A stretch of 64,000 nt of DNA from Mytilus trossulus (lineage: Eukaryota), in NCBI RefSeq assembly GCF_036588685.1, contig NC_086385.1, forward strand, positions 36,479,216-36,543,215, read 5' to 3'. The notes below the pieces were generated by a model. That model made no database searches, had not been told where the DNA came from, and saw nothing but the letters and a program-made list of their open reading frames with translations. Positions 8,134 to 62,409 of the stretch are shown in pieces. Position 1 is the first letter of the stretch. Each line of letters begins with the position of its first letter. Made by a program: the position numbers and the translations under genes.

Positions 8134-10254
8134 ATGAAATTTACAGAAAAGGTATGAAATTAAACTCGTATTTTTTTTTCTATTTTCAAATATTGTTATT
8201 CAAAAATGTTTGGATGATATTTTTTTATAAGATTGCCATCCTACTTTTCCAATTGATGGTTGCTTTCCTACTTTTTATACGACCCCAAGATTTTGTGGGG
8301 GGATTCGTGTAATGCTATGATGTCGTCTGCGTCGTCTGTATCGTCGTTGTTGTCGTCGTCGTCGTCCGAATACACATTTGGTTTACGGACAATAACTTAT
8401 GTTCTAGTGAATGGATCTTTATAGAATTTTAAAAGAATGTTCAATACTACACAAGAAAGGTTTGGATTGATTTTGGGGTTAATGGTACTAACAGTTTCGG
8501 AATAAGGGGCCACAAAGGGACAAACAACAGCATTTTTGTAGTTTAATTTCAGTCTATAACTTGTGTGTTAGTGTATGGATCTCTCTGACATTGCACCACA
8601 ATGTTTTACATTACAAAGGAAAACAGGGATTTAATTTAGGGATAATGGCCTCAAATAAGGGTCAAAGAAGAGGCCAAAATTAAGCATTATTTCTAGTTTC
8701 CATACAATAACTTGTGTTTAAGTGTATGGATATCTCTTCAATTTTACTACAAGGTTCAATGCTACAAAAGAAAAGGCAGGGATTGAGTTGGGGGTAAGTG
8801 CTCCAAAGGGGGGGGGGGGGTTAAATAAAATTGGGGGGAGGTTTTTTTTCAAAAAGTTTCAAATTCATTTTTTTTTTTAAGTTTCACGAAGAAATCTTCA
8901 TTTGGGAAGTGCTATTTTGCAGGTTGCAGGTTGCGGGTTGCAGGTTGCAGGTCACACATAAATATTATATGTATGTAAATACATGTATAAAATCTACCCC
9001 ATGACTAATAAATTTAAAATTATTTAAAATAATTCAATAATCATAATTTTGATACACATACATGTATCTTATAATGCTAATTCTACTTCTTAATTGCTAT
9101 TAATATAGTTCTAAACATCGATTCCAATTAAGTGAAATCAATACAAACTTGACATGGACTGAACAGGTTCTATAGAACATATTTTTCTGTATTAATCTAG
9201 TTACATAAACAATTAAATTCCTTTTGGTGGACATCCAACATCGTTGAGGCTTATATTAAGAAATTATTAGGTTTAAATAATTGTATAAATGCCCTTTCTT
9301 GCATGAACATAATTTAGCGCAAAAAACAAACAAAATAACTTCCTTCCCTTTATCTGATAAGAATTGTATCCGTGAGATCTCTAAATAAAGAGGACAACCT
9401 AAATATAGATAAAGATTTTCCAAAAACTATATTCGGGAACCCATTTGGCTAAATAGTTATATTTAGCATGCTAGATAATACATGTATCATTGGTTGCATC
9501 ATGTTTATAAAACATTGTTAATTAGTCTTTAACAATATTTTTGAATATTTCATCATTTAAAAATACTAATTGTGCAGATAATGGTCAGATGTTTAATATT
9601 TGATAAACATTGACAAAAGAGAAGACCGTGGTCTTAAAATGACATAAGTGATAAATGGATCATAGATTTCAAATGTTCCGCCATTTTCTGTCTATCTATG
9701 CTTTAAACAAAATAAGTATTCTTGATTTACAACCTCATAGTATTGTGCAAACTTGTACGATAACTATCAATAAAATGTGTACTATTTTTAGATTTGAAAT
9801 CTACTTACCAATCTAAATATAACTAATGTGGACTTTCCAACTAGAGCTATCGCGCAATTTAAAACTGTTTGACGTGCTTTTTGTGTAGAAAATCTTACCG
9901 ATTACATCATTATTATTTATTCATCACTTCAGTTGTCCTTGAATACTGATAAGCATTTAATTATAGTCTCAATGAAAATTTTCATAACAATAAAAAGAAT
10001 AAAAAGCAAATTTTCATTTTATCGGTTCATATTTTGAATAACATTTGCAAAGATGAAGCTGACAGAAAAGGTATGAAATTAAGCGCATTATATATTTCAA
10101 GACTATTTTCGAATCTGATTAGTCACAAATGTATAGATGGGATGTGTTTTTAAGATTTTTATCCTAGTTTTTATACGACCGCAAAAATTATAAAAATTTT
10201 TGGTCGTATATTGGTATCACGTTGGCGTCGTCGTCTGTGTCGTCGTCGTCGTCT

Positions 10255-10289
<35 letters not shown>

Positions 10290-13200
10290 CGAATACTTTT
10301 AGTTTTCGCACTCTAGTAAGAGTGAATAGAAATCTATGAAATTTGAACACAAGGTTTATGACCACAAAAGGAAGGTTGGGATTGATTTTGGGAGTTTTGG
10401 TCCCATCAGTTTAGGAATTAGGGGCCAAAAAGGGCACAAATAAGCATTTTCTTGGTTTTCGCACTATAACTTTAGTTTAAGTGAATAGAAATCTATGAAA
10501 TTTTAACACAAGGTTTATGACCACAAAAAAAAGGGTGGGATTGATTTTGGGAGTTTTGGTTCCAACAGTTTAGGAATTAGGGGCCAACAAAGGACCAAAA
10601 TAAGCATTATTCTTAGTTTTCGCACAATAACTTAAGTATTAGTAAATAGAAATCAATGAAATTTAAATACAAGGTCTATAACCACAAAAGAAAGATTGGG
10701 ATTGATTTTGAGAGTTGAGGTCCGAACAGTTTAGGAATTGGGGGCCAAAAAGGGGCCCAAATAAGCATTTTTCTTGGTTTTCGAACTATAACTTTAGTAT
10801 AAGTAAATAGATATCTATGAAATTTAAACACAAGGTTTATAACCATAAAAGGAAGGTTGGGAGTGATTTTGGGAGTTTTGATCCCAACAGTTTAGGAATA
10901 AGGGGCCCAAAGGGTTCAACATTAAACTTTGTTTGATTTAATAAAAAATTGAATAATTGGGGTTCTTTGATATGCCGAATCTAACTGTGTATGTAGATTC
11001 TTAATTTTTGGTCCCGTTTTCAAATTGATCTACATTAAGGTCCAAAGGGTCCAAAATTAAACTTAGTTTGATTTTAACTAAAATTGTATCCTTGGGGTTC
11101 CTTGATATGCTGAATCTAAATATGTACTTAGATTTTTGATTATTGGCCCAGTTTTCAAGTTGGTCCAAATCAGGATCCAAAATTATCATATTAAGTATTG
11201 TTCAATAGCAAGAAATTTTCAATTGCACAGTATTCAGCAATAGCAAGAAATCTTCAATTGCACAGTATTGTGCAATAGCAAGTCTTTTCAATTGCACAGC
11301 ATTGTGCAATAGCAAGAAATATCTAATTGCACAATATTGTGCAATAGCAAGACATTTTTTAATTGGAGTTATCTTTCTTTGTCTAGAATAGAAGTTGAAT
11401 TAACTTAAATCATTGTTTTATACAATATACAATGTATATTCACTTTTACTTCCAACTGAGAAATTAAAACAATCTTTACCATTCAGTGATAACAAGCACT
11501 TTTTTTACATTTTAATATTTTATGATGTATTTAAATGAGTAGTTATTGTTGCAAACTCCATTAGAAATTTGAATTGAGTTCAGTTTTGGAATAAGGGAAT
11601 GGGGGATGTGAAAAAAAAATTTGGGGGGGGGTTCAATTTTACTCATTTCAGATTTCATAAATAAAAAGAAAACTTCTTCAAACAATTTTAGAGAGGATTT
11701 ATATATTCAACAGCATAGCGAATTGCTCAAAGGCAAAAACAAAAATTTTACGTTCATTAGACCATATTAATTGTGTGTCAGAAACCTATGCTGTGTCAAC
11801 TTTTTAATCACAATCCAAATTTAGAGCTTAATCCAGCTTGAATGTTGTGTCCATACTTGCCCCAACCGTTCAGGGTGCAACCTCTGCGGTCGTATAAAGC
11901 TGCGCCCTGCGGAGCATCTTTTTCCATTTTAGTTTTATTTACTTTTTATAAGATATTTTATCATGTTTATAGTAAATGTTTAAGGACTATCAATTGTTCT
12001 ATAATTATCATCAGAGATCGATATATCCTTTTTATACTGCCATGTGAGAGACTGAAAAACAGTAACGATGACCAAATATTTTGCGGTAATAATCTCAACG
12101 AATGTCCCATGTGGTGCAAATTTAACAAATACATTAAATAATTAAACGATAAGTATTGTCATAGATCACAATTAGTATATTTGGTGATCTAATTTTTCCA
12201 AGCTGTAAGCATGGTAAAACAATTTCGCAAAAAGTAACTTACATGAACATGATAACGGTATAGAGAGAAAACGACAGAATAGTTATCAAAGGTACCAGGA
12301 TTATAATTGTGTACGCCAGCACGCGTTTCGTCTACATAAGACTCTTCAGTGAAAGTAAAGCCAAACAAGTACAATGTTGAAGAGCATTGAGGATCAACAA
12401 TTCCAAAAAGTTGTGCCAAATACGGCTAAGGTAATCTATGCCTGGGATAAGAAAATCCTTAGTTTTTCGAAAAAATTCAAGTTTTGAAAACAGGAAATTT
12501 ATAAATATGACCACATTATTGATATTCATGTCAACACCGAAGTGTTGACTACTGGGCTGGTGATACCCTCGGGGGCGAAACGTCCACCAGCAGTGGCATG
12601 GACCCAGTGGTGTAAATAGTTATAAAAGCTACGAGGATTATAATTGTGTACGCCAGACGCGCGTTTCGTCTACATAAGACTCATCAGTGACGCTCATATC
12701 AAGAGATTTTAAAGCCAAACAAGTACAAAGTTGAAGAGCATTGGGGATCCAAAATTCCAAAAAGTTGTACCAAATACGGCTAAGGTATTCTATGCAAAAG
12801 AGCGCTAGTGGTAAACGTCACTAACGGTTCTAATATTTCTGAAAAGGGTGAACCGCTCCCGTCATGATTCAGTGATTTCCTTTTAAATTAACAAAACGTT
12901 TTTTCAAAAAGGGGGCCCTGGTTACCCACAGCCTCTTTTAATCCGCCAACGAACGTATGTTCGGACAATTACTTTCAATTATCATTAGAATCTTAAAAAT
13001 ACATCAACAGATATACATACATATAATTATAAGATTCAAAGAAGAAGAGTTTGTATCTTCAAAAATTCTTGATCTGTCGTGTACATTGACAACCGAAACA
13101 GCTATATTTTAAAGAACTTTTTTATCATATTTAACATGCTTAATTTACGATGTAACTGCTCAATTGTTTTTGAAGATACCATGATACAATTGATATTCGC

Positions 13201-15104
13201 TCAAATATGCTACAGGTCAACATTGTTAATTTTTAGTATTCCAAAGTCCAATTTCTTTCTATATATAGAACATGTTTAAAAAATAATAAATGTTGTATGC
13301 TTCAACATGTGGATCATCCTAAGCCTACGACATATGTGTAGAAGTAGGTATAAAGTATTTCTGCGATTTGCCAGTTAAACAAATAAAGGTTTTGGTTAGT
13401 CATAAATCATCACATGTGATTCATTACAGTAAAATATGATACATGCCAAGGTCTCAAAGATTTTGTAAAGTATTACAAATATAAAATGTAACATATTGTA
13501 TTTCCTTTCAGACAAACTGCTGTTCCCATTGTAAACGGGAAAATAATAAGTGCCTAAAGAAGAAACAAGTTTTGAAACATTTCTTAGGCGACAAAATAAA
13601 TGCTTCTCTTCTTAAAAAGACAAAAACAGTACCAAACGCATATGGGTTGTACTGTATTACAAGTAATGATGCTGGTGAAGTTTTGTACATTGGGTTTTCG
13701 AACCGTAGTGTGCGACAAAGATTGTTGGTAAGTTTTAAAAAAAGAACTTGAAATAAAACTTTGATGTTATTCATAGTTAAACCAATGACCTTCTTTCATT
13801 GTGCGGGATTCAATTTCAAATGAAATACAGTGCATATATTATATTCGTTTGCTTTTATATTAATGGCCAAAATTATGTTGTCCATTGTTTTTGTTTAATT
13901 GTGATGTTAAAAATGAAAATTAATTCATTTTCTCAGATGATTCATATATTACTTATGAAATAAAATCATGTTACGATAATTGCCATCATAAACTACAGCA
14001 AAATGTTTACCGAAACTGTCAAGGCTATCCTAGCAGATCTAAAATATATACTCTTAAATGTCTCAAAGAATGGTGTACACATAAGTCTAACTTAAAGAGC
14101 ATATAATTTGGAACTTTAAGGACATGTGATGATTTACCTAGGAGGCGTAGGGAGGCTGGTAAAACATGTAGAGGGATACACTTTATCCATTATATTAGTC
14201 GTCGGGTTTATTTCACAAAATTTGATAAAGGTTATCTCTTAAGCAATATATGCTTAATTTAACCCAAAAAATAACAGGAAAATTTATGTACAAGAAAATG
14301 TATACATTCATATTGATAATTTTATAAAAGTCATTATGGATGCATCATCTCAAGAATCTCGCATTTCAAAGGGAATAGAATGGGTAGTTATTGTTATAGA
14401 CACTAGAAGTAAACATTATGACTATCATTGAATCAAGGGCGTCGTGATTTTTTTTTGTGTAAGGAGGGGGGAAACAAATTTTTGAAAATTTGAAAATTAA
14501 AAAAAAACCAACATATTTCCCGAAAGAAAATACCGTATTTTTTGAATGTGCATTTGGTCATGTGCTATTTGTCTGACAACAACCATTCCAAAATTGCGTG
14601 CATAAGTGGTCTCCATTTTGTTGATACTATATGTTTTGATGTAAGGTTGGATTTTTTAGTTTTGAAACCTTACACATGAAATTGAGAATGAAAATTTGGA
14701 ATCTGTCAAAGAGACAACAACCCGACCAAAGAGCAGACAACAGCCGAAGGCCACCAATGGGTCTTCAATATTTAGCTATCAAGATAGTATTAAAAAAATG
14801 ACTGCTAAAGCCTCGCAAATCCACATTCCTCCATAATATAATGAAAGATATGTGTTAATAATGTAATTCGTGCTAAAAATATTCAATCTTGTCTCTTCAG
14901 GCTCATACAGGAGGATATGATAAACAGGCAATTGGTAGGTTCTTGAAAGGAAAGGATTTACGGAAATTCTCGCTCTCCTGGGTTAAGGAGCGAAAAGCGG
15001 AGTGTTTAGAACAACAGTTTATTGAATACGTTACCCATGATCAAGGTTTTCGACCATTGTTCAACTTAAAAAGAGGGAGATCATGTGGCAAAAAGGAGGA
15101 ATGA
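8134..15104 (+). CDS. Spliced stand-alone GIY-YIG nuclease gene, paralog A (145 aa): exons 8134-8151 (or duplicate 10053-10070), 13512-13727, 14901-15104
   Basis: Phase-0 GT/AG junctions give MKFTEK|TNCCSHCKRENNKC...VPNAYGLYCITSNDAGEVLYIGFSNRSVRQRLL|AHTGGYDKQAIG...AECLEQQFIEY...RPLFNLKRGRSCGKKEE*. It has GLY...YIG, RxxxH, Glu and PxFN motifs. Coding exon sizes (18/216/204 nt) match paralog B. Confidence 0.82.
8272..8902 (+). mobile_element. HINE-like element, 3'-truncated
   Basis: TTTTTATACGACC start, CGT repeats and GGGGCC-containing tandem units; similar to 59645-60750. Confidence 0.75.
10168..11920 (+). mobile_element. Helentron-associated non-autonomous element (HINE/DINE-1-like), full length
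   Basis: 5' TTTATACGACCGC with a nearby inverted copy, (CGT)n microsatellite, ~150-bp internal tandem array, 3' sub-TIR GCGGTCGTATAAA followed by a GC-rich stem-loop, T-rich flanks. Confidence 0.82.
12278..12795 (-). repeat. Hammerhead-ribozyme tandem repeat (retrozyme-like), ~1.5 units of ~337 bp
   Basis: The unit start AATAGTTAT recurs at 12278 and 12615. Each unit carries a type I hammerhead motif on the minus strand. Confidence 0.8.
12650..12693 (-). ncRNA. Minimal type I hammerhead ribozyme
   Basis: Minus strand GCGTCA-CTGATGA-GTCT tatgt AGAC-GAAA-CGCGCG-TC-TGGCGT: conserved core, stem II, palindromic short stem III and stem I. Confidence 0.85.
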
Positions 15105-43019: not shown

Positions 43020-43040
43020 GTAAAAGATATTGGTGTTCAG

Positions 43041-46000
43041 ATGTCAGATAGCCGAGTAAGGAAATTTACAGTAAAAGGCAAAGCAATGTTTGACGAACAA
43101 AGTGAAAAACTAAAGGACAAAGTTGACAATGTATGGTCTAAGTTAGAGGATTTATTTGTTACTCTGCTATCCTGTCAGATGTTAAAGGATTATAGAAATT
43201 TAGAGAAAAATGTTAATGCAAATTTCAAAGAATTTTGTCGTCGTTCAGAAGAGTATAAACAATATTTACAAAGGACAAATACTGAAGAATCCAGAAAAGT
43301 GTTGCACGATCACAATGAATTATTTGATAGTTGTATTAGCGTCGTCAGAAGAGTTAGTAACGATATTAAGAAAAAGAAACTTGAATTAGTTGAAGAATTA
43401 TCGGAAGTGAGTGGATCAACTGTTGGGTCATCAGCGAGTCACAAAAGAGCAAAAGCAGAGGCAGAAAAGGTTCGTTTAGAATATATTAAAAGAGAAAGTG
43501 AACTGTTAAAACAAAAAGCAGATATAGAAGCAAGTATGAGCGTTGTAAAACAAGAAGGAATAGTTGAAGCAGCAGAGGTAGAGGCCAGAATTTTGGAAGA
43601 TCAAGATCAAGAATTGCCGATGGTGTTAGAGGACAAACATGACAAGGTTAGCAAGTACGTAGACACATTACCAAGTTATAGTGCAAATCAATGGACAAAT
43701 GGTGTTGGCTTTTCTGACAATCAGCCATATGTTTCAGTGACGGCTCCGTTTGCTCCTCAATACAATAATCTTCCTCCTGTATCATCTGAATTATTATCCA
43801 TGATGCAACCGATTTCGGCTACAATGTTAAGTCAACCGATTTCCGCTACAGCGTTAAATCAACCGATTTCCGCTACAGTGTCAAGTCAACCGATTTCCGC
43901 TACAGTGTTAAGTCAACCGATTTATGCTACAGTGCCAAGTCAACCGATTTATACTGCAGTATCTAGTCAACCATCACATTTTCAATCAAATGCTACCAAC
44001 TATCAACAACCTCAACCTATGTCTTACTTACCACCACATAATCCGTACGTAAGTGTCATGTCTGATGTTACAAAAGTCATGCTACGGAAAGATTTTCTGT
44101 TGACACGTTTTATGAACTTTGATGACACACCCGAATCTTTTGCTTCCTGGCGAGCATCTTTTCAGAGTATAACTGGTGAACTCTGTGTTTCTCCATTCGA
44201 GGAAATGGATTTGTTAATAAAATGGCTAGGTCCGGAGTCCTCGACATTTGCCAAGAGTCTAAGAGCTTCAAATGCACACGATCCATCCAGAGGTTTAAAC
44301 CGCATTTGGGATCGATTACAGGAACGATATGGTCGACCGGAAATGGTAGAAAATGCTTTGAAGAAAAAATTGAATTATTTTCCGATTATCACAAACAATA
44401 ACAGTTCGAAACTCTACGATCTCCTTGACATACTTAGTGAAATAGAGTCCGCAATGGCGAACCCGATGTATTCAACACTGTTAAGCTACTTTAATTCTTC
44501 GTCAGGTGTTTCTCCGATTGTATCAAAGCTTTCTTATTCCCTGCAAGAGAAATGGACAACACAAGCGTCAAATTACAAGAAAAAACATTCAGTGCCGTAT
44601 CCGCCATTTTCCTTCTTTATTAATTTCATCAGAGATATGTGTCAAATTCACAATGATTCTGCTTTTAGTTATTCAAATTCTAGCACTTCTAGCAATACAA
44701 AGCGTTCTTCAAATCCAGTTCTTACTAGGAAAGTTGAGGTTTCAGCTCAGAGTAACACTCGTGTATATGATAGCAATAATCGTTGTCCGATACATAAAGC
44801 TGGACATACTTTAAGTGAGTGTCGCGGTTTCCAAAAGCGATCATTTCAGGATCGTCAGCGTTTTCTCCGTGAAAAGAAAATATGTTTCCGTTGTTGTCAA
44901 TCAAATGACCATATATCAAGGAACTGCAATGTCAATGTTAAATGTTCAATTTGCGGAAACAATCGCCATGTTTCATCTATGCACATAGATCGTCCACCCA
45001 CAACCGACAAAATCAGTACACCAAAAACTGATGAAGACAATGGCGGGGAGTTATCTACAGAAACAGTATCAGCAATATGTACAAGATTGTGTGGAAATAT
45101 GCGTGTCGGCCGTTCGTGTGGGAAAACAGTTTTAGTGGATGTTTTCTCTGGAACTCCTCCTGAACAGTCTGTTCGTGTCTACGCAATTATAGATGATCAG
45201 AGTAATCATAGTCTTGCGACGCCGGATCTTTTCGATCGACTTGGACTCCATGGTTCTCAAAAACAGTTCGTATTGTCGTCATGTTCTGGTAGCTCTACTA
45301 TGGTAGGCAGATATGCTAGTGGTATTCGTATATGCTCTATTGATGGACAATCAACGTTTGATATGCCAAGAGTTATAGAATGTGACTCCATTCCTAGTGA
45401 TTTACATGAAATACCGACTCCAGATGTTGCAAATGCACACCCGCATCTACATAGTATTGCTCCATACTTACCTGCATTAGATCCAAGTTGTAAAGTTGAA
45501 CTTTTGATAGGACGCGACTTACCTGAAGTGCACCATGTAACGGAACAAATTATTGGTGGCAAAGGTGAACCTTTTGCACAAAAACTTCCTTTAGGATGGG
45601 TTGTAATTGGAGAGGTATGTCTTGGGAAGGTTCATGCTCCTTCTGTTATCAACGTTCGCAAAACTCATGTGTTAAATGATGGACGACACACAACTTTCCC
45701 TTTGTGTGATTTAAATATCAAGGTTAACGATGTCCAAGATCACAATTTTGTTCGTACACCGGCAGACAACAAATTAGGTCCCTCGGTTCAGGACAGACAG
45801 TTTCTAGAACTAATGCAACGTCACTTTCGTAAAGATGAGAATTGTCTTTGGTCAGCTCCTTTGCGATTTATACAACCGAAACCACAAATGCCTAACAATC
45901 GTTATCAAGCATGGAAAAGAGCTCAGATTTTAGACTCAAGCTTGCGGAAGGACTCTAAAAAGCTTGAACATTTTGTTACCTTTATGTCAAAAGTGATAAG

Positions 46001-49000
46001 TAGTGGTGCAGCTGAAGTGGCACCTGACGAGATTCCAGGAGAATGCTGGTATCTTCCTCTTTTTGGGGTGTACCACCCTAAAAAACCAAATCAAATACGT
46101 GGAGTTTTCGACTCATCAGCACTGTATGAAGGAGTATCTCTTAATAGTATTCTAATGTCCGGACCGGACCTGACTAATAACCTTGTTGGAGTGCTCATGC
46201 GTTTTAGAAAGAATAGAATTGCAATAACAGGTGACGTTGAACAAATGTTTTACCAATTTCATGTTGATGAATATCATCGAGATTATTTGCGTTTCTTTTG
46301 ATATGAGAACAATGACATCATAAAACCGTTGTTTGAATACCGCATGAAAGTACATGTGTTTGGCAACACCCCTTCACCTGCTGTAGCGACATATGGTTTA
46401 CGTGAAGCTGTTTCAGAAGCTGAAAATGATGTGCGTTCTTTTGTTACGAATGATTTTTATGTAGATGATGGTCTGATCTCTTTTGCAGACAAGGATGATG
46501 CAATTGACCTTATGCAAAGAACACAAAAAGCTCTCAAGGATAATGGGAACATACGATTACACAAAATCATTTCAAACGATATCGATGTGATGAAAGCTTT
46601 TCCTTTAGAGGATTTAGGAAAAGAGTTAAAAGATTTAGATTTGTGCTCAGATACTTTGCCTGTTCAGCATAGTTTAGGTTTGTCGTGGAATTTACAGACA
46701 GACATGTTTATCTTTCGTGTTAATGATGATGAAAAACCAATCACCCGTAGAGGCATACTTTCAACTATTAACAGTTTGTTTGATCCGTTGGGTTTTATTA
46801 CGCCGCTAGTCATCAGTGGAAAAATTCTACTTCGAGAAGTTGTTCCACCAGGAACTGATTGGGATGATCCGCTGTCGATTGATCATGAAACAAAATGGAA
46901 AAACTGGTTGAAGTCTTTGAAATCTTTTAGTTGTTTTGAAATACCGCGTATGATTGTTCCGGTATCTATTTCTTTGACACGTCAAGTTGATATCCACATT
47001 TTCTCTGATGCTTCAGAACAAGCAATCTCTGCTGTAGCTTACCTGGAGGCAATCGATGAAACTGGTTCGTCATTTATAGGTTTTCTTACTGGAAAGTCGA
47101 AACTTGCACCTATCAAAGGTCATACTATTCCTAGATTGGAACTGTGCGGTGCCGTGTTGGCTACGGAAGTCGGAGAAGCGATATGTCATCATATAAATCT
47201 TTCTCAGAGTGTTTGTCATTACTACACAGACAGTCGAGTAGTGTTAGGATATATATGTAATACCACCCGTCGATTCTTCACATATGTCAGTAATCGTGTA
47301 GAAAAGATTCATACAGTGTCGGAACCTTCACAGTGGTCATATGTATCAACGGATAGAAACCCAGCTGACTTAGGGACTAGATTTATTAGCTGTTCAGACA
47401 TGCAAATTATTAGTTCTTGGATTAACGGACCGAAATGGTTAATAAACAAGGAACCTTTTGATATTGTATCTTTTCCGTTGTTATCACTACATTGCGATTA
47501 GGAAATTCGCCTGAAATTGTTTCACGTAAAACACAAATCGACAGTCTACAGATTGACTCTCAACGATACAGCAAGTTTTCTAGTTGGCGATCTCTCGTCA
47601 GATCATTATCACTCTTGAGACACATAGCTAAGACTTTAAGTACTACAACAACATCTCGTTGCAAAGGTTGGCATATTTGCGTTGAAAAGGACACTCCAGA
47701 TTTTATCAAGGGAACCGAGACATTGGTTATTAGACAAGTACAAAAGGAATTCTTTGACACGAAATAGATTCTTTAAATACTGACCAGCATGTTTCCAAAA
47801 ATAGTGCGATTTTAAAACTTGACCCAATACTGGATGAACATGGTATTTTACGAGTAGGAGGTAGATTGAATCGCTCTACATTGACACTTGGTGAAAAGAA
47901 TCCTATTCTAATTCCTGGTAAACACCATATTGCAAGATTACTAGTGTTACATTATCACGAACAAGTCCGTCACCAGGGACGCCATATAACCGAAGGCGCA
48001 ATCAGGAGTGCTGGTTACTGGATTACCGGTCTCAAGCGTTTGATATACTCAATTATTTCAAGTTGCGTTTTATGCCGAAGGTTTAGAGGTACTTTTTCGA
48101 CTCAAAAAATGGCTGATCTTCCAGAAGAAAGACTTTTAGCATGCCCACCATTTACATATGTTGGCGTTGATTGTTTTGGACCCTGGAACATTGTCACAAG
48201 ACGTACTCACGGTGGAATCGCAAATTCAAAAAGATGGGCTGTCTTATTTGTTTGTTTGTTTTTCATGTCGAGGTGTTCATATTGAAATAATTGAAGAGAT
48301 GACTACCGCATCATTTATTAATTCACTTCGCCGCTTCATATCAATCAGAGGATATGTTAAAGAATTCTTTTCTGATAGAGGAACCAACTTTATTGGCGAA
48401 GCCCGAGAGCTTGGCATAGAAGCTTCCTTTGTTGAGGACTCAGTGTTTCAATCCTTCATGAAAGAACAAAAAACTGTGTGGAAATTCAATACACCGTATT
48501 CATCCCACATGGGAGGTGCATGGGAACGTCTCATTGGCATAGCAAGGCGTATATTGGACTCAATATTGTTTGAAGCTAGATATCAACGACTCACACATGA
48601 AGTATTATGTACTTTCATGGCAGAAACAACAGCTATTATGAACTCTCGTCCGTTAGTGCCTATTTCATCCGATCCTAACGCACCATCTATCTTATCTCCA
48701 AGTACTTTGCTAACACAGAAAGTGAGTGACAATATTGAGGACTTCAGTCATTTGAACACGCGTGATGTTTACACAAATCAGTGGAAATTTGTTCAAGTGT
48801 TAGCTGACAAATTTTGGACACGTTGGCGAAGAGAATATTTGCAGTCGTTACAAACTCGTCGCAAATGGCAACACATCAAACAAAACATTCAAGAAGGTGA
48901 TGTAGTGCTTCTTAAAGACAATGAACTCCATCGAAATAACTGGCCAATAGGTCTTGTTGAACGTGTTTTTCCCGGTAGAGACAATTTGGTTCGTAAAGTT

Positions 49001-49081
49001 CAGTTGAGGGTTGTAAAAGACAAACAACACCGTGTGTATGTGCGACCAATTAGCCAAGTTGTGTTACTGTGTCATAGTTGA
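43041..49081 (+). pseudogene. BEL/Pao gag-pol polyprotein, interrupted
   Basis: Three gag Cys/His knuckles (CPIH..HTLSEC, CFRC..H..C, CSIC..H..H), protease IIDDQS, RT YVDD, RNase H FSDAS and IPRLELCGA, integrase GVDCFGP/SDRGTNF/GGAWERLI. Stops or frameshifts at about 46299, 47490, 47765 and 48255. Confidence 0.92.
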
Positions 49082-50302: not shown

Positions 50303-51533
50303 TTAAACGTCATATAGAAATGCGACTTTATCACAGTTAGCTACCAGAAGTAAGTATTTATATGTATCAAAATAAATTGCACGATCGATGGTTTAGGAGT
50401 CCATCACTAGCTTCAATCAGCTCTTTCACCAGCTTTCCGTCTGGAGATTTCACAACAATATTGTTTGAGTCAAAACAGCAACATAAGTATTAGAATCAGT
50501 ATCTAATGTGATGCCGTACGGTTTTCTGAGCAACAAATCGCAATATGTCAATTGTACTTGTCCATTGAAATCGTAGCATACGACAGACTGATCGAGGTGG
50601 TTGGCATGGACAATATTTTTTTCTGTTGAGGTAATAAATGTGCCATTTGTACATGGTCCATGTAACTGGCAAATTTCACATTCCCAAAGGTCTTTATCTC
50701 TTTTATGAACCGCGTCAGTTTTTCATTGAACATACATGCCATAGTTACATTGTTTAAGCTTCCGTTGTCATATAACTTTTGGACGATAATTTCCTTTGTT
50801 TGAATAATGTTCTTTGTATGCCTTTGTTTTGTTCCCATGGCGATTTGAATATTCGATGCAAACGTTTGTAAAGATTTCAAATCAATTTGAATTTCGTTTA
50901 CTTTCTGTTTTCCATCTTCTAATTTCGCAATTACAGCTTCTATTTCCTGACAGTATTGTTTCTCAGTTACAGATGCCTTTTTCTAGTAATTTTCCTCCTA
51001 AGAGATCTAAAATACAAGTAATTTCATGTCGCTTATTTTTTATGTGTTTTCTAATCATCACCTTCTGTTCACCTTGTTCACGTAATTCACTCAAATTCCG
51101 ATTTCTATCCTTGAGAGCGATAAATTTTACCTTCTAAATATTTCAAAACATTTGCAAAGTTATTTAACGCTGTTGACTGATGTCCTGAAGATGACGTAAT
51201 GAAAGCAACAATGTAAGTAGCTTCCTTGCATTCCCTATGACATGATATCAAACCAAGTTTGCAACAAAAAGAGTCATGGAATTTGCAATGAAATTCAGGG
51301 ATACAGTCGTGCTCGTCACAGTTAAAGCTTATTTGCTTGATAAAAGACGGTAATTTGTTATATTTGTCTACAGAGATGGTCTGATGTGATTTTGACAATT
51401 TTGATATCTTATGATGATCTCGGCAGTCTCCTTAAAGAGCATTTTCACATTGCGTGCAGTATTTTTCTGCTGGCTTATCGAGGTCTCTATTTTGGCAAAT
51501 GTCGCAAAACAGTGCACTTTCTATGGCGGCCAT
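50303..51533 (-). pseudogene. TRIM-like gene 5 pseudogene
   Basis: ATG GCC GCC at 51533. B-box fragment (ORF 51105..51398), coiled-coil fragment (50548..50880) and C-terminal blade remnants ending FLYDV* at 50303. Several frameshifts and a deletion of about 0.5 kb in the propeller. Confidence 0.85.
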
Positions 51534-52465
51534 ATTATACATATTTTTTTCGTAAATGAGGTAAATATAAAATGGCTTACTACATCAACGTTTCTTTATT
51601 TGCAATCAACATTTCACCCTAGAAAAAAAATTATGAAGATAAAATCAATAATTAAAAAAGCATACACAATTAAGTTCAATATGCGTACATATATAATACA
51701 GAAGGATTAGATATTATTGTTCTTTCCGTATGGAAATTTTCCTTCATCTAACAAAAATTATTTTGAATTCGTTTCAAAAAACACCCTCACCTTATGTAGT
51801 ATATTGTTTTTATAAACTACGAGGTACCTTTCTTTGTTACTGTTCTTACCTTATTGTAACATTGTTAGACTTTTCCTTCATGTGTTCAAAGTAAACCGTT
51901 AACTTATATTGTTATCAAAGTACCAGGATTACACAAGACTCATCGGTGACGCTCAAAATATTTATAAAGCCAAACAAGTACATATCCTTTTTAATTATAA
52001 TGATTTTACCTGTGGTTTCCTTTGTAAATGTGTAATATATTAATACAAACTAAGATATATAGATATTAATTTTTTTTTATTTGAAACATCCATCATACCT
52101 CAGTTTTCGATTTTATTCAAAACGATTCACTTCAACTATTCACTGAAGAGAAACATTTTCCCTCCGTTCTTTTTTTTTACGTTCCTTGAGACCTTAAGAA
52201 ATGAATATCAAAACGCAGAAAGTTTTTTTAATTTCCTATAAACTTGAAATTATTTCTGTAATTATTTCCAGGTGTACATTATTTACTTTTCTGGGGTTTA
52301 ATCACCTATAAATTATTGCGTTCATGTTTTTGAATTCCCTGCAAATACGACAATGCCTACGAGAAACCTGTCACGTAATTCAAGTGACTACTGAAGAGGA
52401 AATTCAGTATACTTTAAAACGCAAACATTTAATTAAAAGATGTCCACTTTTCTATCTTATTTCTT

Positions 52466-53149: not shown

Positions 53150-55345
53150 CTAAGTCTGATGCTGGGTCCGTTTCTGTGTGTGTTACATTTTAGTGTTATG
53201 TAGTTGTTCTCCTCTTATATTTAATGCGTTTCCCTCGGTTTAAGTAGTTACCCCGATTTTGTTTTTTGTCCATGGAATTTCTCGCTACATTGAAGACCTG
53301 TTGGTGACCTTCTGCTGTTGTTTTTTGTTTTGTCGGCCGGTTGTTGTCTCTTTGACACATTCCCCATTTCCATATTCAATTTCATAATACTGTTGCCTTT
53401 ATTTGCAAATATCTGCATGAATTTTTCTATCTATATAGGAAAAAACCTATGGTGACCCTATCTTTTCTTTTGATATTCTCATTGTCAAAACTGCTATCTT
53501 ATCGTATTTTATTTAATTTACAATTCTGTCATTAGGTTTAGCTTCTATAGTAACATAATGATTTTTTTTGTCATTCATACTCAATACAAAATGTGCAATT
53601 TTGTCATAACCTGAAGCTTGGAAATATTCTCATTGACCTCTCATTTTTATTTTATTTTTGAATATATCATAGATATACTACAGATAATCACATTCTATCA
53701 CCTTAATCATGTTAAGGATGTTCGCTACTCTGTTTAAAAATAACAAGCTTTTTAAATGGCTGTTATAAATTGATAGTATATAAATAAAGAAACTAAAAAA
53801 GCAGAAATAAATGGAGGGTCCGTGTGCTTGTTTTCGAGATAGTATAAGCTATTGAAATTTGGCGCGAAATAATTATCTGTAGATTTTTCATTGACTTAAA
53901 AGAGGGACGAAAGACACCAAAGGGACAGTCAAACTCGTAAATCTAAAACAAACTGACAACGCCATGGCTAAAAATGAAAAAGACAAACAGAAAAACAATA
54001 GTACACATGACACAACATAGAAAACTAAAGAATAAACAACACGAACCCCACCAAAAACTAGGGGTGATCTCAGGTGCTCCGGAAGGGTAAGCAGATCCTG
54101 CTCCACATGCAGCACCCGTCGTGTTGCTTATGTGATTACAAATCCGGCAGATAGTCTAATTCGGTAGGTCAAATTCATGAAAGGGAATGGGATTGTAGTC
54201 ACGACGTAAGGAACATATCCGATACCATTTGTGAAACGGTTATTCCATAACGGTCAACCAACTCGTGATGGCGTCCGTAAAATTTACGAAGGGATGATTT
54301 CAACTTCACCATTTGGAACTCTTGGTTTAATAGCTTCCTTGTGAGCAGTAACCCTCTATCAAGAAAATCATGATAGGAAATGCAAGCACGGGAATATCGT
54401 ATCAATTGGGAGATATATACCCCGTATGCAGGTGCTGCTGGAATGTTGCTACTTAGAAATGGAAAGTTCACAATTGGAAAGCTGAAATCATCTCTTTTGT
54501 CGTAAAGTTTTGTCTTCAACCGACCCTCATTGTCAATTTCTAGATGTAAGTCAAGATATGAAGCCGACTTAACTGTATCTGTAGTATCCTTTATCTCCAA
54601 TTCGATGGGATAGATGCGATCCACATAGTCACCAAATTTTGAATTGTTTAGTGAAAGAACGTCATCTATATAGCGGAAAGTAGAGTTAACATTGGCACTT
54701 TTGTTGTTGCAAAAACTATGAAAAAATGACAAGGATTTTATAAGACTTTGAAATATGTCTTTGTACACGTTATGTAATAAAATTATAAAAAGAAAAGAAG
54801 AGGTTAGTGGGCAAAATTTGTTAATGGCAATATATGGATAAAACAAATTAAAAAAATAGAGGAGCAAACATCCTTACAAAATGCAATAGCACTAAGTCTT
54901 AAAATTTAAGTAAAGATTAGCAAAGAGTTCAAAAGTTAAATGATGAAAATAAATGATTAAGATTTTCAAATAAGAGGTTAGACACTCATAGACGGTGTTC
55001 TGAAAAGGCATACAAGCATACATTTGGAAAATCAAATACTTTGTGAAATAGATCCAATTAACTCTTTTGTGTTTTCTCTTATTTTTGAGATATTGAGATA
55101 AGACGTGGCACGGTACTTGTCTACCACAAATTCATGTATTTGGTTTTGATGTTATATTTGTTATTCTCGTGGTGTTTTTTCTGATGCTTGGTCCGTTTCT
55201 GTGTGTGTGTGATTTGCGTTTCGGTGTTGTGTCGTTGTTCCCTCTTATATTTAATGCGTTTCCCTCGGTTTTAGTTTGTTACCCCGATTTTGTTTTTTGT
55301 CCATGGAGTTCTGAACAGCGGTATACTACTGTTGCCTTTATTTGT
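53150..55345 (+). repeat. Two dispersed copies of a short interspersed repeat (53150-53275 and 55095-55345)
   Basis: Shared GGTCCGTTTCTGTGTGTG...TTTAATGCGTTTCCCTCGGTT...ACCCCGATTTTGTTTTTTGTCCATGGA. Confidence 0.65.
53897..54690 (-). mobile_element. Penelope-like element, 5'-truncated, well preserved
   Basis: Open frame FRYIDDVLSLNN...HHELVDRYGITVSQMVSDMFLTS* followed by a ~300-bp tail. Confidence 0.88.
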
Positions 55346-57153: not shown

Positions 57154-60100
57154 ATGAAGACGTCTAAGAAGGTAAGAAAAAAAAATCATTTCAGATATCA
57201 AGACAAATTTTGTCTTGAATTTGCGTATCCGATTTAATAGGTAATCTATCTGGGAAACATTTGTTTTTTTTTGAATTTTAATAACATGTTCTACCGTTAC
57301 TCGTTATTTGAGATTTTAATTAAATAGACAATATACAAGATTTTATTGGCACAAACGCATTTACAATAAATGGTAATGACTCTGAGGGCAATGATCGAAT
57401 GGTAGTAAAATACAAACGATTTTATGATCTTTTTTGTGTGAATACTTAAATCAAGACTTAGAGTATAATGAAAATCTATTGCAATAGATTACTTCTTGCA
57501 TTTAAACAATTTGTTACGAAGGAGAAAGATAGTTATAGTGCCGTGTAAGATTTATTATTTATTATAAGCTTATCTTGTTTAACGCATAATGCGGTTATCA
57601 TTATTATACTTTTTTTCTGTAATTTTCAACATAAAGATTAAATAGAAGTCAGTAAAGGCATAGATGTAATACCCATAGGTGAAAGTAAACACACACACTT
57701 ATTATACTACCATTAACTATCCTTTCCGACACGTTTTTTGAGAATTAAAAACAAAAATAAAGTTAAAAATTGTGTATGTTTTGTATGTCAACAAAAAAAC
57801 ATCGCCTTTTGTAAATCTAATTATGGAATAAATCGAACTAAAGTGCTGCTGGTAGAGAAATGACAGTTTGAGAAACATTGAGAAAACATTGCATACTTTT
57901 AAAATCTCAATAAGTGTTTTATTTGACATTTTGGATCGTAATTGTCGTCAAGGTTTTCCGAAAGCTATTAGGTCTGAAAATTGCAAAATTATCATAGTTT
58001 GACAAAATATACAAAATGGGCTTACTCGTTACTTAAGTAGAGTAAACGCGCGTCTGGCGTATATAATTATAATTCTGGTACCTTTGATAAGTATTTGGAG
58101 CACATTATGAAATAACTTATATTTTTAGCATTAAGCATGTTAAGGCTTTCGAAATAGACACAAGTAACCTTTTTTTTATGTTTTAGGACAAAGATGATAT
58201 TCTATGCCATTTTGTGCAATAACTAAACCTTTTCCTGGTATCTATGATCAGTTTATTTGTTATAGGCATTTGCCTATGTAGAGAATGATGTATTAAATCT
58301 TGTTGTATAGCTAGCTAAACCTGCGACTCGTTAGACAACGATCTTTAAACAAAACAAAGAGACATACAAGGCAAAAATGTCAAACATTTGAGTACAGCAG
58401 TCATAATCTAAGCTACTATAAAAACAAACAAATATTTTACAAACAAACACAAAAAGGCGGATAGACAAAGCACATAAGCAAAAATGAAAGACAAGGATAT
58501 AAAGATTTACCATAACACAAGAACACAATGACGAGAGTACAGAGCCTCGTCAATTGAAACCAAAAACATTTTATTTTTTTCCAACTAGCTCTCATCAAGT
58601 GTTAATGCCGGACAGACCTATTTATGGTTATGAATAAACATATGGAAAGAAGCATGGCTATAGTAATTTACGATTCCTGATCACCAATTTAATCAATTAA
58701 GAACGTTCACTGCTTCACACAAATTACCATTCAAATCGGTTTGTTCGTTAACTAAGGTTCCTAACCATGGTCATATTATGAAATATTGTATTTATTGAGT
58801 CTTGCAATTTCTTTCAGGAAAACCGATGTTTACATTGTAAAAAATCAAACTCCCAATGCAAGAAAAAAAGAGCAGTCTTAAACCAGTTATTAAACAAGGG
58901 ATACAATGCGTCCCTTCTTCGAAAAACGAGGGAGGTGCCAAATTCATACGGCCTTTACCTCATCAGAGCTAATGAAGATGACGAAGTTCTGTATATTGGT
59001 TTTTCCAACACGAGTGTTCGAAAAAGATTAATGGTAATTTTTCGTATTTGACATAATAAAACAATAACTTCTTTATACTAGTTACATGTATCTAACATTA
59101 TTTCGGAGTGCACGTACCATTTAATGATAATGTTCTCACAATTTGTTAGTCTGGTAATCTTTTGATTGAAGTTTTTGCACAAAGATTCTATAATTGTATA
59201 ACAAAATAATCCTTCAACAAATTCTTCGTACACAATGACTAGTCATTTTATTCGTACTGTTCGTTTAAACAACACTAAACAGGTAATAGTTTTTTTTTTT
59301 TTTAAAGTTGATTGAATTTAGCACTAAAGGCAAATCAAATAAGACTTCACTTGTAAGAGTAATAAACGCTACATATTCAAGGTATTTTTTTAATTTCAAG
59401 TAAGTACCGAAGTACTGACCAAATGCGCAGCTGATATCACCATGCACTAGCAGACAAACAATACAGTCAATTCAGTACATGACTACAAAAACATACTTAT
59501 TAAATAAATTAAGACCAGAGTGCTTTTCTACATTCAATTTTCTCAAAATGGTTAAGCGTATGTATTAAAACATACTTTCAATTTAGAGCAGCACCTTATA
59601 CATATTCAAATCAAATTAATACCTTTATGTACAGCCAATACAGGTTTTTTTTTATACGACCCAAAAAAAATTTTGGATCGTATAATGGTATGATTGTTCA
59701 TTGTTGAAAGCCGTACGGTGACCTATAGTTGTTAATGTATGTGTCATTTTGTTCTCTTGTGGATAGTTGTCTTATTGGCAATCATTCCACATCTTCTTTT
59801 TTATATGATGTCGTCGTCTGCGTCGTCCGAAGATATATTGGTTTCCGGATAATAACTGTAATTTTAGTGAATATGTCTTTATGAATTTTTTTCCAATGGT
59901 TCAACACCACAAAAGGAAGGTATGGGTCGATTTTGGGGATGATGGTCCAAACCGTTTAGGATAAGGGGCCCATAAGGGGCCCAAAACAAGCATTTTTCTA
60001 GTTTCAGGATAATAAATTTTGCACAAGTATTTCAATTGCTCTGTAATTAATACACAATGTTTAAAATCACAAGTAGAATGTTTGGATTTATTTTGGGGGT

Positions 60101-61203
60101 TTTGGGGCCAAAGTTAAGGAATTAAGGGCCAAAAAGGGGCAAAAACAAGCATTTTTCTAGTTTCCTGACAGAACTTGTGTGTAATTGCATGGATGTCTCT
60201 GACATTGTACCACAATGTAACATATAACAAAGGGGAGGCTGCGATTAAGTTTTGGATTCATTGCCCAAAATATGTAAGAATTAGGGGCCAATAAAGGGCC
60301 AAAAAGAAGCATGTTTCTAGTTTCCAAACAATTATGACAATAACTTGTGTTTAAGAATGTTAAGTGTATGGATCTGTCTGAAATTGTACTACAAGTTTCA
60401 ATACTACAAAGGAAAGCATGTGATTAAGTTATTACTCCAAGGGGGAATTCAAATAAGTTGTGGGGGGATTTTTTTGACAATTTTTTAAGGATTTCCTTTT
60501 TTTTCAAAATTTTTGAAATTTCGAACTTTGAAAAGTTTCAAGAAGAAATCTTCAATAGCACAGTATTGTGCAATAGATTTGTTAGATCTTTGACCACATT
60601 TATTTTGTGACAAAAACCTATATTATGTCAAATTGTTTGACCACAATCCAAATTCAGACAGTATCACGTTTGAATATTGTGACCAAATTTGCCCCCACTG
60701 TTCAGGGTTCGAACACTTGGGTTGTATGAAACTCTGCCCTGCGGAGCACCTATTTATATTTGTAAATATATTTTAACCACAAGTTTATCAAAGTATAATA
60801 CTTTATAGTTTTTGGATAGTCATTTCTATCAATAAACATATATTCGAATCCCGGCGAGGTAAGAACAAAAAATGAGCGAAAAGCAAATTTACAGATCTAA
60901 CATTGTTGGGTTGATGTTTGGACGAGTTGTATATATATATAAAGAAATTTAAGTAATTTGATGTTAAACCATGTTTATTTGTGTGAATCTTTTTTTTAGG
61001 CCCATACGACTGGATACGACCGACAGAAGATTGGGAAGTTCTTAAACGGCAAGGACTTAAAAGATTATTCAATATCTTGGGTGATAGAAAGAAGAGCAGA
61101 ATGCCTAGAGGAAAAATTTATAGACTTTGTTACAACAGAGCAAGGGTTTCGTCCGATCTTTAATCTTAAAAGGGGAAGATCGTGTGGGTCAAAGGAGGAA
61201 TAA
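57154..61203 (+). CDS. Spliced stand-alone GIY-YIG nuclease gene, paralog B (145 aa): exons 57154-57171, 58818-59033, 61000-61203
   Basis: MKTSKK|ENRCLHCKKSNSQC...VPNSYGLYLIRANEDDEVLYIGFSNTSVRKRLM|AHTTGYDRQKIG...AECLEEKFIDF...RPIFNLKRGRSCGSKEE*. Donors GTAAGA (57172) and GTAATT (59034); acceptors TTTCAG (58817) and TTTTAG (60999). About 93/145 residues identical to paralog A by manual count, with no indels. Confidence 0.85.
59645..60750 (+). mobile_element. HINE-like element in intron 2 of GIY-YIG paralog B, with a nested SINE-like fragment (~59695-59806)
   Basis: TTTATACGACC start, CGT repeats, tandem units, and GCCCTGCGGAGCAC end. Confidence 0.78.
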
Positions 61204-62409
61204 ATACATATACATTATAATCTTTTAGAGTATTTGCAATATTTTACCTTAACTAATTTATAAAATGTCAAATAAAATATATCTATTGACCTATATGATG
61301 ACTTGTTATTCTTAACCTTTATTTTAACTTTTCTTGCATTCACAGTATTTAACAATTTCTCTTGACATTCTACGGGTTTTTTTTAAATTTAACTAGTATT
61401 TCAAATTTTAAAAAGAGGAGATGGGCAGGATTGCCAACGAAACAACTTTAACATACACTAATGATGCGAAAAATAACAGGTCATCAAATGGCTGTTAACA
61501 CTAGGGAAAAGGACACTTGATTGAATACAAGAAATTCCATTTTGTAATATTGTTTGGTAGTGATGTGCACACTAGAGTTGACAAAATACTGAACTGGCTA
61601 GGCATCCACGCTTACAGTTTTTCCATTTAATAATTACCACAACCCTTATCCTACGGCAACAGTACATCTTAGGGACGACATCTTAAGTTCAATGTGGAAT
61701 AATAAAAAAAAAATTCACATAGTTTTCCCCCACCTTCTCTGAACTCAATTTGGAAAATTTGATTGAACTATATAGAGATATATGTAAAATCGATTTTGGA
61801 TTAACACAAATTTTACCTTGAGTAAGCTTACCAAAGATATTTTCAAATGTAATTTCCATTCAACATTCCACATGCTAAATTTTCTATGGGTTTGAAATAA
61901 ACATAAACTTAGAATACAGTTTCAAATAAATTTCACAGTTTGCAAGGCCATCAATCTAAAATAAACCATCTTACATAGGGTTGTTTGCTATCATATTAAA
62001 CTGGTTAGAGCTGTTTGCGATTCAATAAATAACTTTTGAATACCTTCATTGATGTTATAAATATAAAAAAATATTAAGTCTTCCCACATACATACTGATA
62101 CATCATTCGCTCGACCAATCTTAGTCTGTTCTAACTAATGAACATGCGGAAAAAAAGACACGAACAAATAATGCAAGATGCCTACTCCTCAAGCCCAGTT
62201 AACTGGACAGAATTCAAAATTTATATAATTCGAGTTTCTGACAATTGTTCACTGGAAGGTGTAATTATTATCTTCAAAGTATGTCTTATGTAAATCAACA
62301 GAACAAAGATTTCGACTAAATAAGACACATCAGCATTGTGTGTAAACAGTTAGAGGTTTAATCCAATAACGAGTAAGTAAAGCCTGTCAGCTGTATACAA
62401 TGTTATATA

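What the first reader, a model, noticed from the sequence alone, without database searches (positions are those of the whole stretch)
57154..61203. Second GIY-YIG paralog with identical exon geometry and signs of purifying selection
Seen: coding exons of 18, 216 and 204 nt, as in paralog A. About 64% amino-acid identity (93/145, manual count), no indels or stops, and many conservative changes (K/R, D/E, F/Y, L/I), while the introns look unrelated and carry different insertions. Every putative catalytic residue is invariant. Inference: both copies have been kept functional for a long time, unlike the decayed transposon ORFs around them.
Basis: partly seen in the sequence, partly recalled or inferred. 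Interest (0 to 1): 0.85.

Follow-up and report, generated by a model that had tools for sequence, protein, structure and literature searches.

The report
Conserved small GIY-YIG nuclease gene, mussel
This is a real three-exon mussel gene, already annotated in RefSeq as an uncharacterised protein. It encodes a 145-residue GIY-YIG nuclease-fold protein, belongs to a small mollusc gene family under clear purifying selection, and has no tested function or demonstrated expression.

Summary
The coding exons are 57154-57171, 58818-59033 and 61000-61203 (18/216/204 nt, all phase 0, canonical splice sites). They match paralog A at 93/145 residues with no indel or stop. Only the exons align between A and B.

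The genome is Mytilus trossulus. The gene is RefSeq LOC134694625 (XP_063411732.1), whose protein equals the three exon translations piece by piece.

Selection is strongly purifying. A-B synonymous sites are saturated (pS 0.82) against pN 0.23. Younger pairs give omega 0.08-0.12. Codon models give 0.17 (exon 2) and 0.036 (exon 3).

The full-length protein passes Pfam GIY-YIG. Its AlphaFold model matches only GIY-YIG nucleases at the top. Tyr53, Tyr65, Arg76, His80, Glu115 and Asn133 are conserved.

B is not merely a "second paralog". The genome has at least seven copies in two clusters, plus two distant ones. Named relatives occur only in molluscs (Mytilus, Tegillarca, Crassostrea, Haliotis).

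Only A-type copies have cDNA or qPCR evidence.

The scan had already noted paralog A in this window (s1-820540) and a near-identical copy of A about 33 kb before the window's start (s1-830236).

Verdict: correct but ordinary, an uncharacterised lineage-specific member of a known nuclease superfamily.

The parts
57154..57171 (+). Paralog B coding exon 1 (MKTSKK), donor gtaag
   Evidence: equals residues 1-6 of RefSeq protein P0042
57172..58817 (+). Intron 1 (1646 nt, phase 0). Holds a SINE/MITE-like piece at 58032-58096.
58818..59033 (+). Coding exon 2. Encodes a basic N-terminal part with C10-x2-C13-x6-C20, then GLY(51-53)...YIG(65-67) and Arg76.
59034..60999 (+). Intron 2 (1966 nt, phase 0). 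It splits the GIY-YIG domain. It carries a repeat-family insertion at about 59810-60761 that also occurs in intron 1 of paralog A.
61000..61203 (+). Coding exon 3 with His80, Glu115, Asn133, the KRGRSC tail and the TAA stop
61271..61276 (+). First AATAAA poly(A) signal, starting 68 nt after the stop
8134..15104 (+). Paralog A (LOC134695236). Alternative first coding exons at 8134-8151 and 10053-10070; exon 2 at 13512-13727; exon 3 at 14901-15104.

Best explanation
Paralog B is a genuine host protein-coding gene of Mytilus trossulus (RefSeq LOC134694625). It is one of at least seven tandem or segmentally duplicated three-exon genes, and purifying selection has preserved it since an old duplication.

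Its 145-residue product is a stand-alone GIY-YIG nuclease domain. The domain is preceded by a short lysine/arginine-rich, cysteine-bearing N-terminal extension.

Shown here: the gene structure, the annotation, the selection, the fold and the intact catalytic residue set.

Inferred:
- It is an active, divalent-metal-dependent endonuclease with a single active site. It would nick or cleave DNA the way the UvrC N-terminal domain, T4 EndoII or R.Eco29kI do.
- The KKKR-rich N-terminus probably takes it to the nucleus or onto nucleic acid.
- Its biological role (repair, or restriction of foreign or mobile DNA) is unknown.
For: - Exons, splice sites and open frame.
- The exon translations equal XP_063411732.1 piece by piece.
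- Selection. A-B pN 0.227 against pS 0.82, Fisher p = 2e-25. Omega is 0.08-0.12 in three unsaturated pairs. ML omega is 0.17 and 0.036, with 2dlnL of 59.7 and 248.8 against omega = 1.
- Pfam PF01541: 25.3 bits against a gathering cut-off of 22.6 on the full-length protein.
- The family profile hits UvrC, EndoII and I-TevI chains in the PDB, best E = 4e-5.
- AlphaFold model: pLDDT 84, pTM 0.78.
- Foldseek's hits with E below 0.3 are all GIY-YIG-fold chains. VIA-align gives Z 9.2 to 4.0 for 18 GIY-YIG entries, and the best unrelated entry scores 3.8.
- Y65, G67, H80, E115, N133 and G137 are invariant in 30 family members. G51, R76, Q87, W105 and P130 are conserved in at least 90%.
- A B ortholog in M. 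galloprovincialis groups with B (support 96/98) and keeps every catalytic residue.
Against: - No transcript evidence for B itself. The B protein cluster holds only the RefSeq record.
- The M. galloprovincialis ortholog reads through the stop for 48 codons.
- The closest copy, B' on contig C40, has no recognisable exon 1 and no protein record.
- Orthologs differ by about 7% in protein between sister species, which is fairly fast.
- Nuclease activity is untested.
- The Pfam score is only just above threshold.
Confidence: 0.8

Rival explanations
1. B is an intact but silent or dying duplicate. Selection acted for most of the time since duplication, but the copy is no longer expressed or needed in M. 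trossulus.
For: No cDNA-type record for B-type proteins, whereas an A'-type full-length ORF sits on a 1096-nt Logan contig. The M. galloprovincialis ortholog has lost its stop. B' lacks exon 1. The TRIM-like gene upstream of B is decayed.
Against: The frame and all four splice sites are intact. B-B' omega is 0.12. RefSeq models the gene as protein-coding. Protein divergence from the galloprovincialis ortholog (6.9%) is no higher than for the D genes (7.7%).
Confidence: 0.1
2. The copies are parts of a mobile element: a Penelope-like-element endonuclease remnant or a homing endonuclease. The constraint would then reflect selection for mobility rather than host function.
For: The GIY-YIG fold is shared with PLE and homing endonucleases. 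The gene has several copies and sits in a repeat-rich neighbourhood. A cysteine cluster lies upstream of the GIY motif.
Against: Only the exons align between A and B, so there are no shared termini. The seven close copies examined share the intron 2 position; intron 1 was placed only in A and B. Copy number is low. B has no cysteine between GIY and YIG, so the CCHH motif that defines canonical PLE ENs is absent. No RT lies in the gene. 36 of the 38 profile hits are small proteins of 84-233 aa, and the two longer hits match only short repeated stretches.
Confidence: 0.03
3. The protein keeps the fold but acts as a non-catalytic nucleic-acid binder or regulator.
For: Activity is untested. In the D copy the GIY tyrosine is His.
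Against: In B, all six residues of the catalytic set are kept, and they are invariant or nearly so across a family diverged to 25-40% identity. That pattern is typical of active enzymes.
Confidence: 0.07

Closest known systems
UvrC / Cho N-terminal GIY-YIG domain (PDB 1yd6, 1ycz)
   Same: Best sequence-profile match (E = 4e-5). Structural Z is 7.4-7.8 over 83-86 residues. Same GIY...YIG...R...E...N layout. One Haliotis family member is named 'uvrABC system protein C-like'.
   Different: No UVR motif, no RNase H-like second nuclease domain and no HhH domain. The protein is 145 residues, eukaryotic and intron-bearing. It has a His at the position four residues after the Arg, as in I-TevI.
R.Eco29kI and T4 endonuclease II (PDB 3mx4, 3nic, 2wsh)
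   Same: Top Foldseek hit, with the N-terminal helices also aligned (TM 0.54 on the query). EndoII gives Z 8.5. Both are small single-domain GIY-YIG enzymes that act on foreign DNA.
   Different: Sequence identity is only 11-17%. No PADLOC or PHROG family is matched significantly. Host, gene structure and oligomeric state are unknown or different.
N-terminal GIY-YIG domain of a plant glutaredoxin (PDB 2lwf)
   Same: Highest structural Z: 9.2, rmsd 2.9 A over 95 residues. It is also a eukaryotic, nuclear-encoded GIY-YIG domain.
   Different: There it is fused to a glutaredoxin module, whereas here it stands alone. Identity is 16%.
Penelope-like element GIY-YIG endonuclease (cd10442; PMC8557442)
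   Same: An animal GIY-YIG domain with upstream cysteines. PLEs are abundant in bivalves.
   Different: B has no CCHH motif between GIY and YIG. There is no RT, the gene has spliceosomal introns, copy number is low, and copies do not share flanks.
SLX1 (URI domain plus RING)
   Same: A eukaryotic GIY-YIG structure-specific nuclease.
   Different: Only Z 2.5-2.8. There is no C-terminal RING/PHD finger, and nothing here suggests an SLX4 partner.

Membership tests
GIY-YIG nuclease superfamily (Pfam PF01541) | Score above the curated Pfam gathering threshold | tested here: met
   P0042: 25.3 bits against 22.6, E = 2e-5, residues 50-119. The single exons alone fall below threshold because intron 2 splits the domain.
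GIY-YIG nuclease superfamily (Pfam PF01541) | GIY and YIG motifs on two adjacent strands, 10-11 residues apart | tested here: met
   GLY at 51-53 and YIG at 65-67, with 11 residues between the two tyrosines. The model has strands at 51-57 and 62-69.
GIY-YIG nuclease superfamily (Pfam PF01541) | Conserved Arg, His/Tyr, Glu and Asn after the YIG motif | tested here: met
   H80, E115 and N133 are invariant in 30 relatives; R76 is conserved in at least 90%.
GIY-YIG nuclease superfamily (Pfam PF01541) | GIY-YIG alpha/beta fold | tested here: met
   Model pLDDT 84. Foldseek's hits with E below 0.3, and the top 18 VIA-align entries (Z 9.2 to 4.0), are GIY-YIG-fold chains. The best unrelated VIA-align entry scores 3.8.
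GIY-YIG nuclease superfamily (Pfam PF01541) | Metal-dependent phosphodiester cleavage | not testable with these tools
   Needs a biochemical assay.
Penelope-like element endonuclease | CCHH motif with two cysteines between GIY and YIG | tested here: not met
   B reads GLY-LIRANEDDEVL-YIG with no cysteine; A has one. The criterion is taken from PMC8557442.
Penelope-like element endonuclease | Linked reverse transcriptase in the same ORF or element | tested here: not met
   The ORF is 145 aa. 36 of the 38 profile hits are 84-233 aa, and the two longer proteins match only short repeated stretches. There are no shared flanks between copies.
UvrC / Cho excinuclease | UVR motif, C-terminal RNase H-like nuclease and HhH domains | tested here: not met
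   The protein ends 12 residues after the catalytic Asn. NCBIfam UvrC/Cho models match only their N-terminal 50-100 positions, far below cut-off.
GIY-YIG homing endonuclease (I-TevI type) | C-terminal DNA-binding modules and residence in a self-splicing intron or as a free-standing phage gene | tested here: not met
   No further domain. The gene is a nuclear gene with spliceosomal gt-ag introns.
SLX1 | C-terminal RING/PHD zinc finger after the URI domain | tested here: not met
   No such domain in Pfam. Structural Z is only 2.5-2.8.

The most novel reading that the evidence does not exclude
The mollusc-restricted family of stand-alone GIY-YIG nucleases could be an innate-immune effector set. 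It would cut foreign or mobile DNA, such as herpes-like viruses of bivalves or active retroelements, as an animal counterpart of phage-restricting GIY-YIG enzymes.

The family is tandemly expanded in Mytilus and Haliotis. On this chromosome it is interleaved with B-box/NHL TRIM-like genes, and a TRIM-plus-nuclease pair may have been the ancestral duplication unit.
Probability: 0.1. Interest if true: 0.7.

Novelty: new member of a known kind. Interest (0 to 1): 0.27.

Why it matters
If active, these would be among the few stand-alone GIY-YIG nucleases encoded by animal nuclear genomes, apart from SLX1, ANKLE1 and transposon-borne domains. The family has been expanded and kept under selection in a lineage known for gene presence/absence variation and large immune-gene families.

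As it stands, the finding adds a correct evolutionary reading (purifying selection, old duplication) to a gene that RefSeq already lists as uncharacterised. It does not open a new kind of system. Its practical value is a clean candidate set, with named catalytic residues, for a nuclease assay and for expression studies after challenge.

Tried and rejected
- **Contig look-up.** I could fetch neither DNA of the M. galloprovincialis ortholog nor transcript contigs.
- **Exon handling.** Exons were searched singly by reference. Full-length analyses used P0042, a protein returned by the database, which matches the three exon translations piece by piece.
- **Single-exon Pfam scans.** These were sub-threshold.
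- **phmmer of P0042 against PDB sequences.** It gave only chance haemoglobin hits.
- **PADLOC, PHROGs and NCBIfam.** These gave only motif-level, non-significant matches.
- **ESM Atlas.** It gave generic small GIY-YIG clusters from phages and bacteria, which is no evidence of transfer.
- **Rfam and tandem-repeat scans of the locus.** Nothing relevant.
- **Literature.** Two literature searches were badly framed and useless. A targeted one found no paper on this family beyond PMC6215123.
- **TRIM linkage.** Sampled 10-kb pieces further upstream of U, B', D', A' and the two C1 copies, and one piece downstream of D, showed a TRIM-like gene only beside the recent duplicate of A. A general sensor-effector module is therefore not supported.
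- **Pairwise dS for A-B.** It cannot be estimated because of saturation, so I report pN/pS, younger pairs and ML codon models instead.
- **Coral membership.** I could not confirm this: the named members I saw are all molluscs.
Full report
**What is there**

The stretch 57154-61203 (+) holds three coding exons of 18, 216 and 204 nt, all multiples of three.
- Exon 1: 57154-57171, ATG...AAG followed by gtaag.
- Exon 2: 58818-59033, preceded by tttcag and followed by gtaat.
- Exon 3: 61000-61203, preceded by tttag and ending in TAA.

An AATAAA starts 68 nt after the stop.

Paralog A has the same layout, with exon 2 at 13512-13727 and exon 3 at 14901-15104. Its 18-nt first coding exon exists twice, at 8134 (MKFTEK) and at 10053 (MKLTEK). 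These correspond to RefSeq isoforms X2 and X1.

A and B share 3/6 + 42/72 + 48/67 = 93/145 residues without indel or stop.

In a sensitive blastn, only the exons and 5 to 16 flanking bases on either side align between the two genes. The remaining matches are one repeat family that sits in intron 2 of B (about 59810-60761) but in intron 1 of A (about 10272-11929), plus short SINE/MITE-like pieces.

At this base composition, an open 145-codon frame has a chance probability of about 1.4e-5.

**Identity of the gene**

A profile of exon-3 translations (alignment A2) was scored against 1.84 billion representatives. It returned 38 clusters at E <= 0.001; 36 of them are small proteins of 84-233 aa, and two longer proteins (754 and 509 aa) match only short repeated stretches.

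From those hits, word-index searches returned P0042, 'uncharacterized protein LOC134694625 [Mytilus trossulus]', XP_063411732.1. It lies on a contig of 63,222,996 bases, the same length as the window's contig. P0042 equals the three exon translations piece by piece.

So the genome is M. trossulus, and the gene, with these very coding exons, is already in RefSeq.

**A family, not a pair**

The window's genome holds seven close copies.

| Copy | Location | Record |
|---|---|---|
| U | Contig C13, near-identical duplicate of A about 48 kb upstream | LOC134694332; frameshifted tail in an A-run |
| A | C13, in the window | LOC134695236 |
| B | C13, in the window | LOC134694625 |
| D | C13, about 6 kb past the window's end | LOC134695047 |
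| B' | 4.07-Mb contig C40 | none found |
| D' | C40 | LOC134701290 |
| A' | C40 | LOC134701323 |

All seven keep ag|...|gt around exons 2 and 3.

Two distant copies on contig C1 carry the whole domain in one 133-codon open frame, with no intron at the position of intron 2.

A protein tree puts B with its M. galloprovincialis ortholog (P0043, support 96/98). This B clade is sister to a type seen in M. edulis and M. galloprovincialis. The tree places the D clade (which includes an M. californianus protein) separately; the A/A' rows cluster without a supported fork.

Named relatives outside Mytilus are from Tegillarca, Crassostrea/Magallana and Haliotis; in Haliotis rubra several loci lie on one 1.34-Mb contig.

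**Selection**

- For A-B, Nei-Gojobori counts summed over the three exons, without joining them, give 78.3 non-synonymous differences on 345 sites (pN 0.227). They give 73.7 synonymous differences on 90 sites (pS 0.82, saturated).
- The Fisher test gives p = 2e-25, and the bootstrap pN/pS is 0.21-0.37.
- 24 of 31 shared four-fold sites differ.
- dS, and so the ratio itself, cannot be estimated for this pair. It can only be bounded well below 1.
- Three younger, unsaturated pairs give omega 0.10 (A-A'), 0.12 (B-B') and 0.08 (D-D').
- IQ-TREE GY+F3X4 models over six copies, run per exon, give omega 0.17 for exon 2 and 0.036 for exon 3. The gain over omega = 1 is 2dlnL = 59.7 and 248.8. Kappa was fixed at 2 in the null, so this test is approximate.
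- Protein divergence of B from its galloprovincialis ortholog (10/145) is like that of D (11/142).

**What the protein is**

- Full-length P0042 passes Pfam GIY-YIG (25.3 bits against 22.6). Single exons do not, because intron 2 cuts the domain.
- A 30-member family profile matches the UvrC N-terminal domain (E = 4e-5), T4 EndoII and I-TevI among PDB sequences.
- An AlphaFold model built on that alignment has pLDDT 84 and pTM 0.78. Only residues 1-9 and 143-145 are disordered.
- Foldseek's hits with E below 0.3 are all GIY-YIG-fold chains: R.Eco29kI, UvrC, a plant glutaredoxin N-domain, EndoII, Hpy188I and I-TevI.
- VIA-align gives Z 9.2 to 4.0 for 18 such entries. The best unrelated entry scores 3.8.
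- Y65, G67, H80, E115, N133 and G137 are invariant in the family. G51, I55, R76, Q87, W105 and P130 are nearly so.
- With Y53, these are the residues known to be catalytic in I-TevI and UvrC. That assignment rests on established knowledge of the superfamily; the R, H, E and N residues are named as catalytic in PMC8557442.
- B has no cysteine between GIY and YIG, so the CCHH motif that defines canonical Penelope-like element endonucleases is absent, and no RT is linked.
- No UvrC, SLX1 or homing-endonuclease accessory domain is present.

**Likely mechanism**

Shown here: a conserved, intact GIY-YIG fold with a complete catalytic set.

Inferred:
- It is a single-active-site, divalent-metal-dependent endonuclease.
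- Its basic N-terminus (KKSNSQCKKKR) serves nuclear import or nucleic-acid contact.
- The family-wide cysteines C20, C112 and C140 might hold a structural metal or a disulfide.

Whether it works in repair or in restricting foreign or mobile DNA is open.

**Expression**

Indirect evidence concerns other copies only.
- A 1096-nt Logan contig carries a complete A'-type 145-aa ORF (P0077), which only a spliced transcript can give.
- The 'GIY-YIG DC' qPCR primers of PMC6215123 were designed for M. galloprovincialis digestive gland, where the transcript was down-regulated after DSP toxins. They map to A's exon 2 (position 13699, 2 mismatches) and exon 3 (position 14918, 4 mismatches).
- Those positions give 29 + 41 = 70 nt across the junction, which equals the paper's stated amplicon size.
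- The B protein cluster holds the RefSeq record alone.

**Context**

- The window carries a minus-strand array of B-box/NHL TRIM-like genes at 543-2417, 26560-28283, 31511-33228 and 37098-38813. A decayed copy lies at 50306-51560, about 5.5 kb upstream of B. That spacing mirrors the 5.7 kb between the first TRIM-like gene and A.
- In sampled flanks of the other copies, a TRIM-like gene appeared only beside U, the recent duplicate of A. A general TRIM-nuclease module is not supported.
- A BEL/Pao element lies at about 43-49 kb.

**Verdict**

The object is an annotated, uncharacterised, lineage-specific member of a well-known nuclease superfamily. Paralog A was already followed up in this scan with the same conclusion (s1-820540).

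Noticed in passing
L017:6514-8100 and L027:954-2825 (C13, about 48-55 kb upstream of A): This is a near-identical duplicate of A plus its TRIM-like neighbour. It shows dS = 0 and two amino-acid changes over 125 codons. An A-run near the 3' end shifts the frame and gives a 198-aa RefSeq protein (LOC134694332). It is either a very recent segmental duplication or an assembly duplication.
   Followed up: partly
L018:5984-7281 (C13, about 6 kb past the window's end): A fourth tandem family member, D (LOC134695047, 142 aa). Its GIY tyrosine is replaced by His (GIHCIK), whereas its C40 counterpart D' keeps GIY.
   Followed up: partly
L019, L020, L021 (contig C40) against the C13 copies: Divergence is mosaic. 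In all three C13/C40 pairs the exon-2 segment is much closer than the exon-3 segment (B-B' 98.6% against 81.6% nt; A-A' 94.0% against 80.6%; D-D' 90.8% against 84.4%). This suggests gene conversion of the 5' half or a breakpoint in intron 2.
   Followed up: partly
L019:1-6179: B' on C40 shows no sequence like B's exon 1 and has no protein record. It may be a truncated copy.
   Followed up: no
L022:5500-5898 and L023:5105-5503 (contig C1): Two distant family members carry the whole GIY-YIG domain in one 133-codon open frame, with no intron at the position of intron 2. One of them (L023) has a weak AT-hook match in its RGRPKK tail.
   Followed up: partly
window 8134-8151 and 10053-10070: Paralog A has two alternative 18-nt first coding exons (MKFTEK and MKLTEK). 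Both are used in RefSeq isoforms. B shows only one.
   Followed up: yes
window 50306-51560 (-): A decayed TRIM-like (B-box/NHL) copy, matching in several broken tblastn pieces with residues 357-505 of the query unmatched, lies about 5.5 kb upstream of B. The spacing is the same as between the intact TRIM-like gene at 543-2417 and A. This is the subject of another note (s1-820623).
   Followed up: partly
window 42984-49081 (+): A BEL/Pao-type LTR retroelement. It has a 1105-aa frame with only a weak DUF1759 hit, a Pao peptidase, an integrase zinc finger and an integrase core. I saw no RT match between protease and integrase.
   Followed up: partly
P0043 (M. galloprovincialis LOC143059461): The B ortholog reads through the stop into 48 codons of what is 3' UTR in M. 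trossulus. This is either a real stop loss or a feature of that reference individual.
   Followed up: no
window 54199-54867 (-): A 222-aa open frame between the decayed TRIM-like copy and B, with no Pfam match.
   Followed up: no
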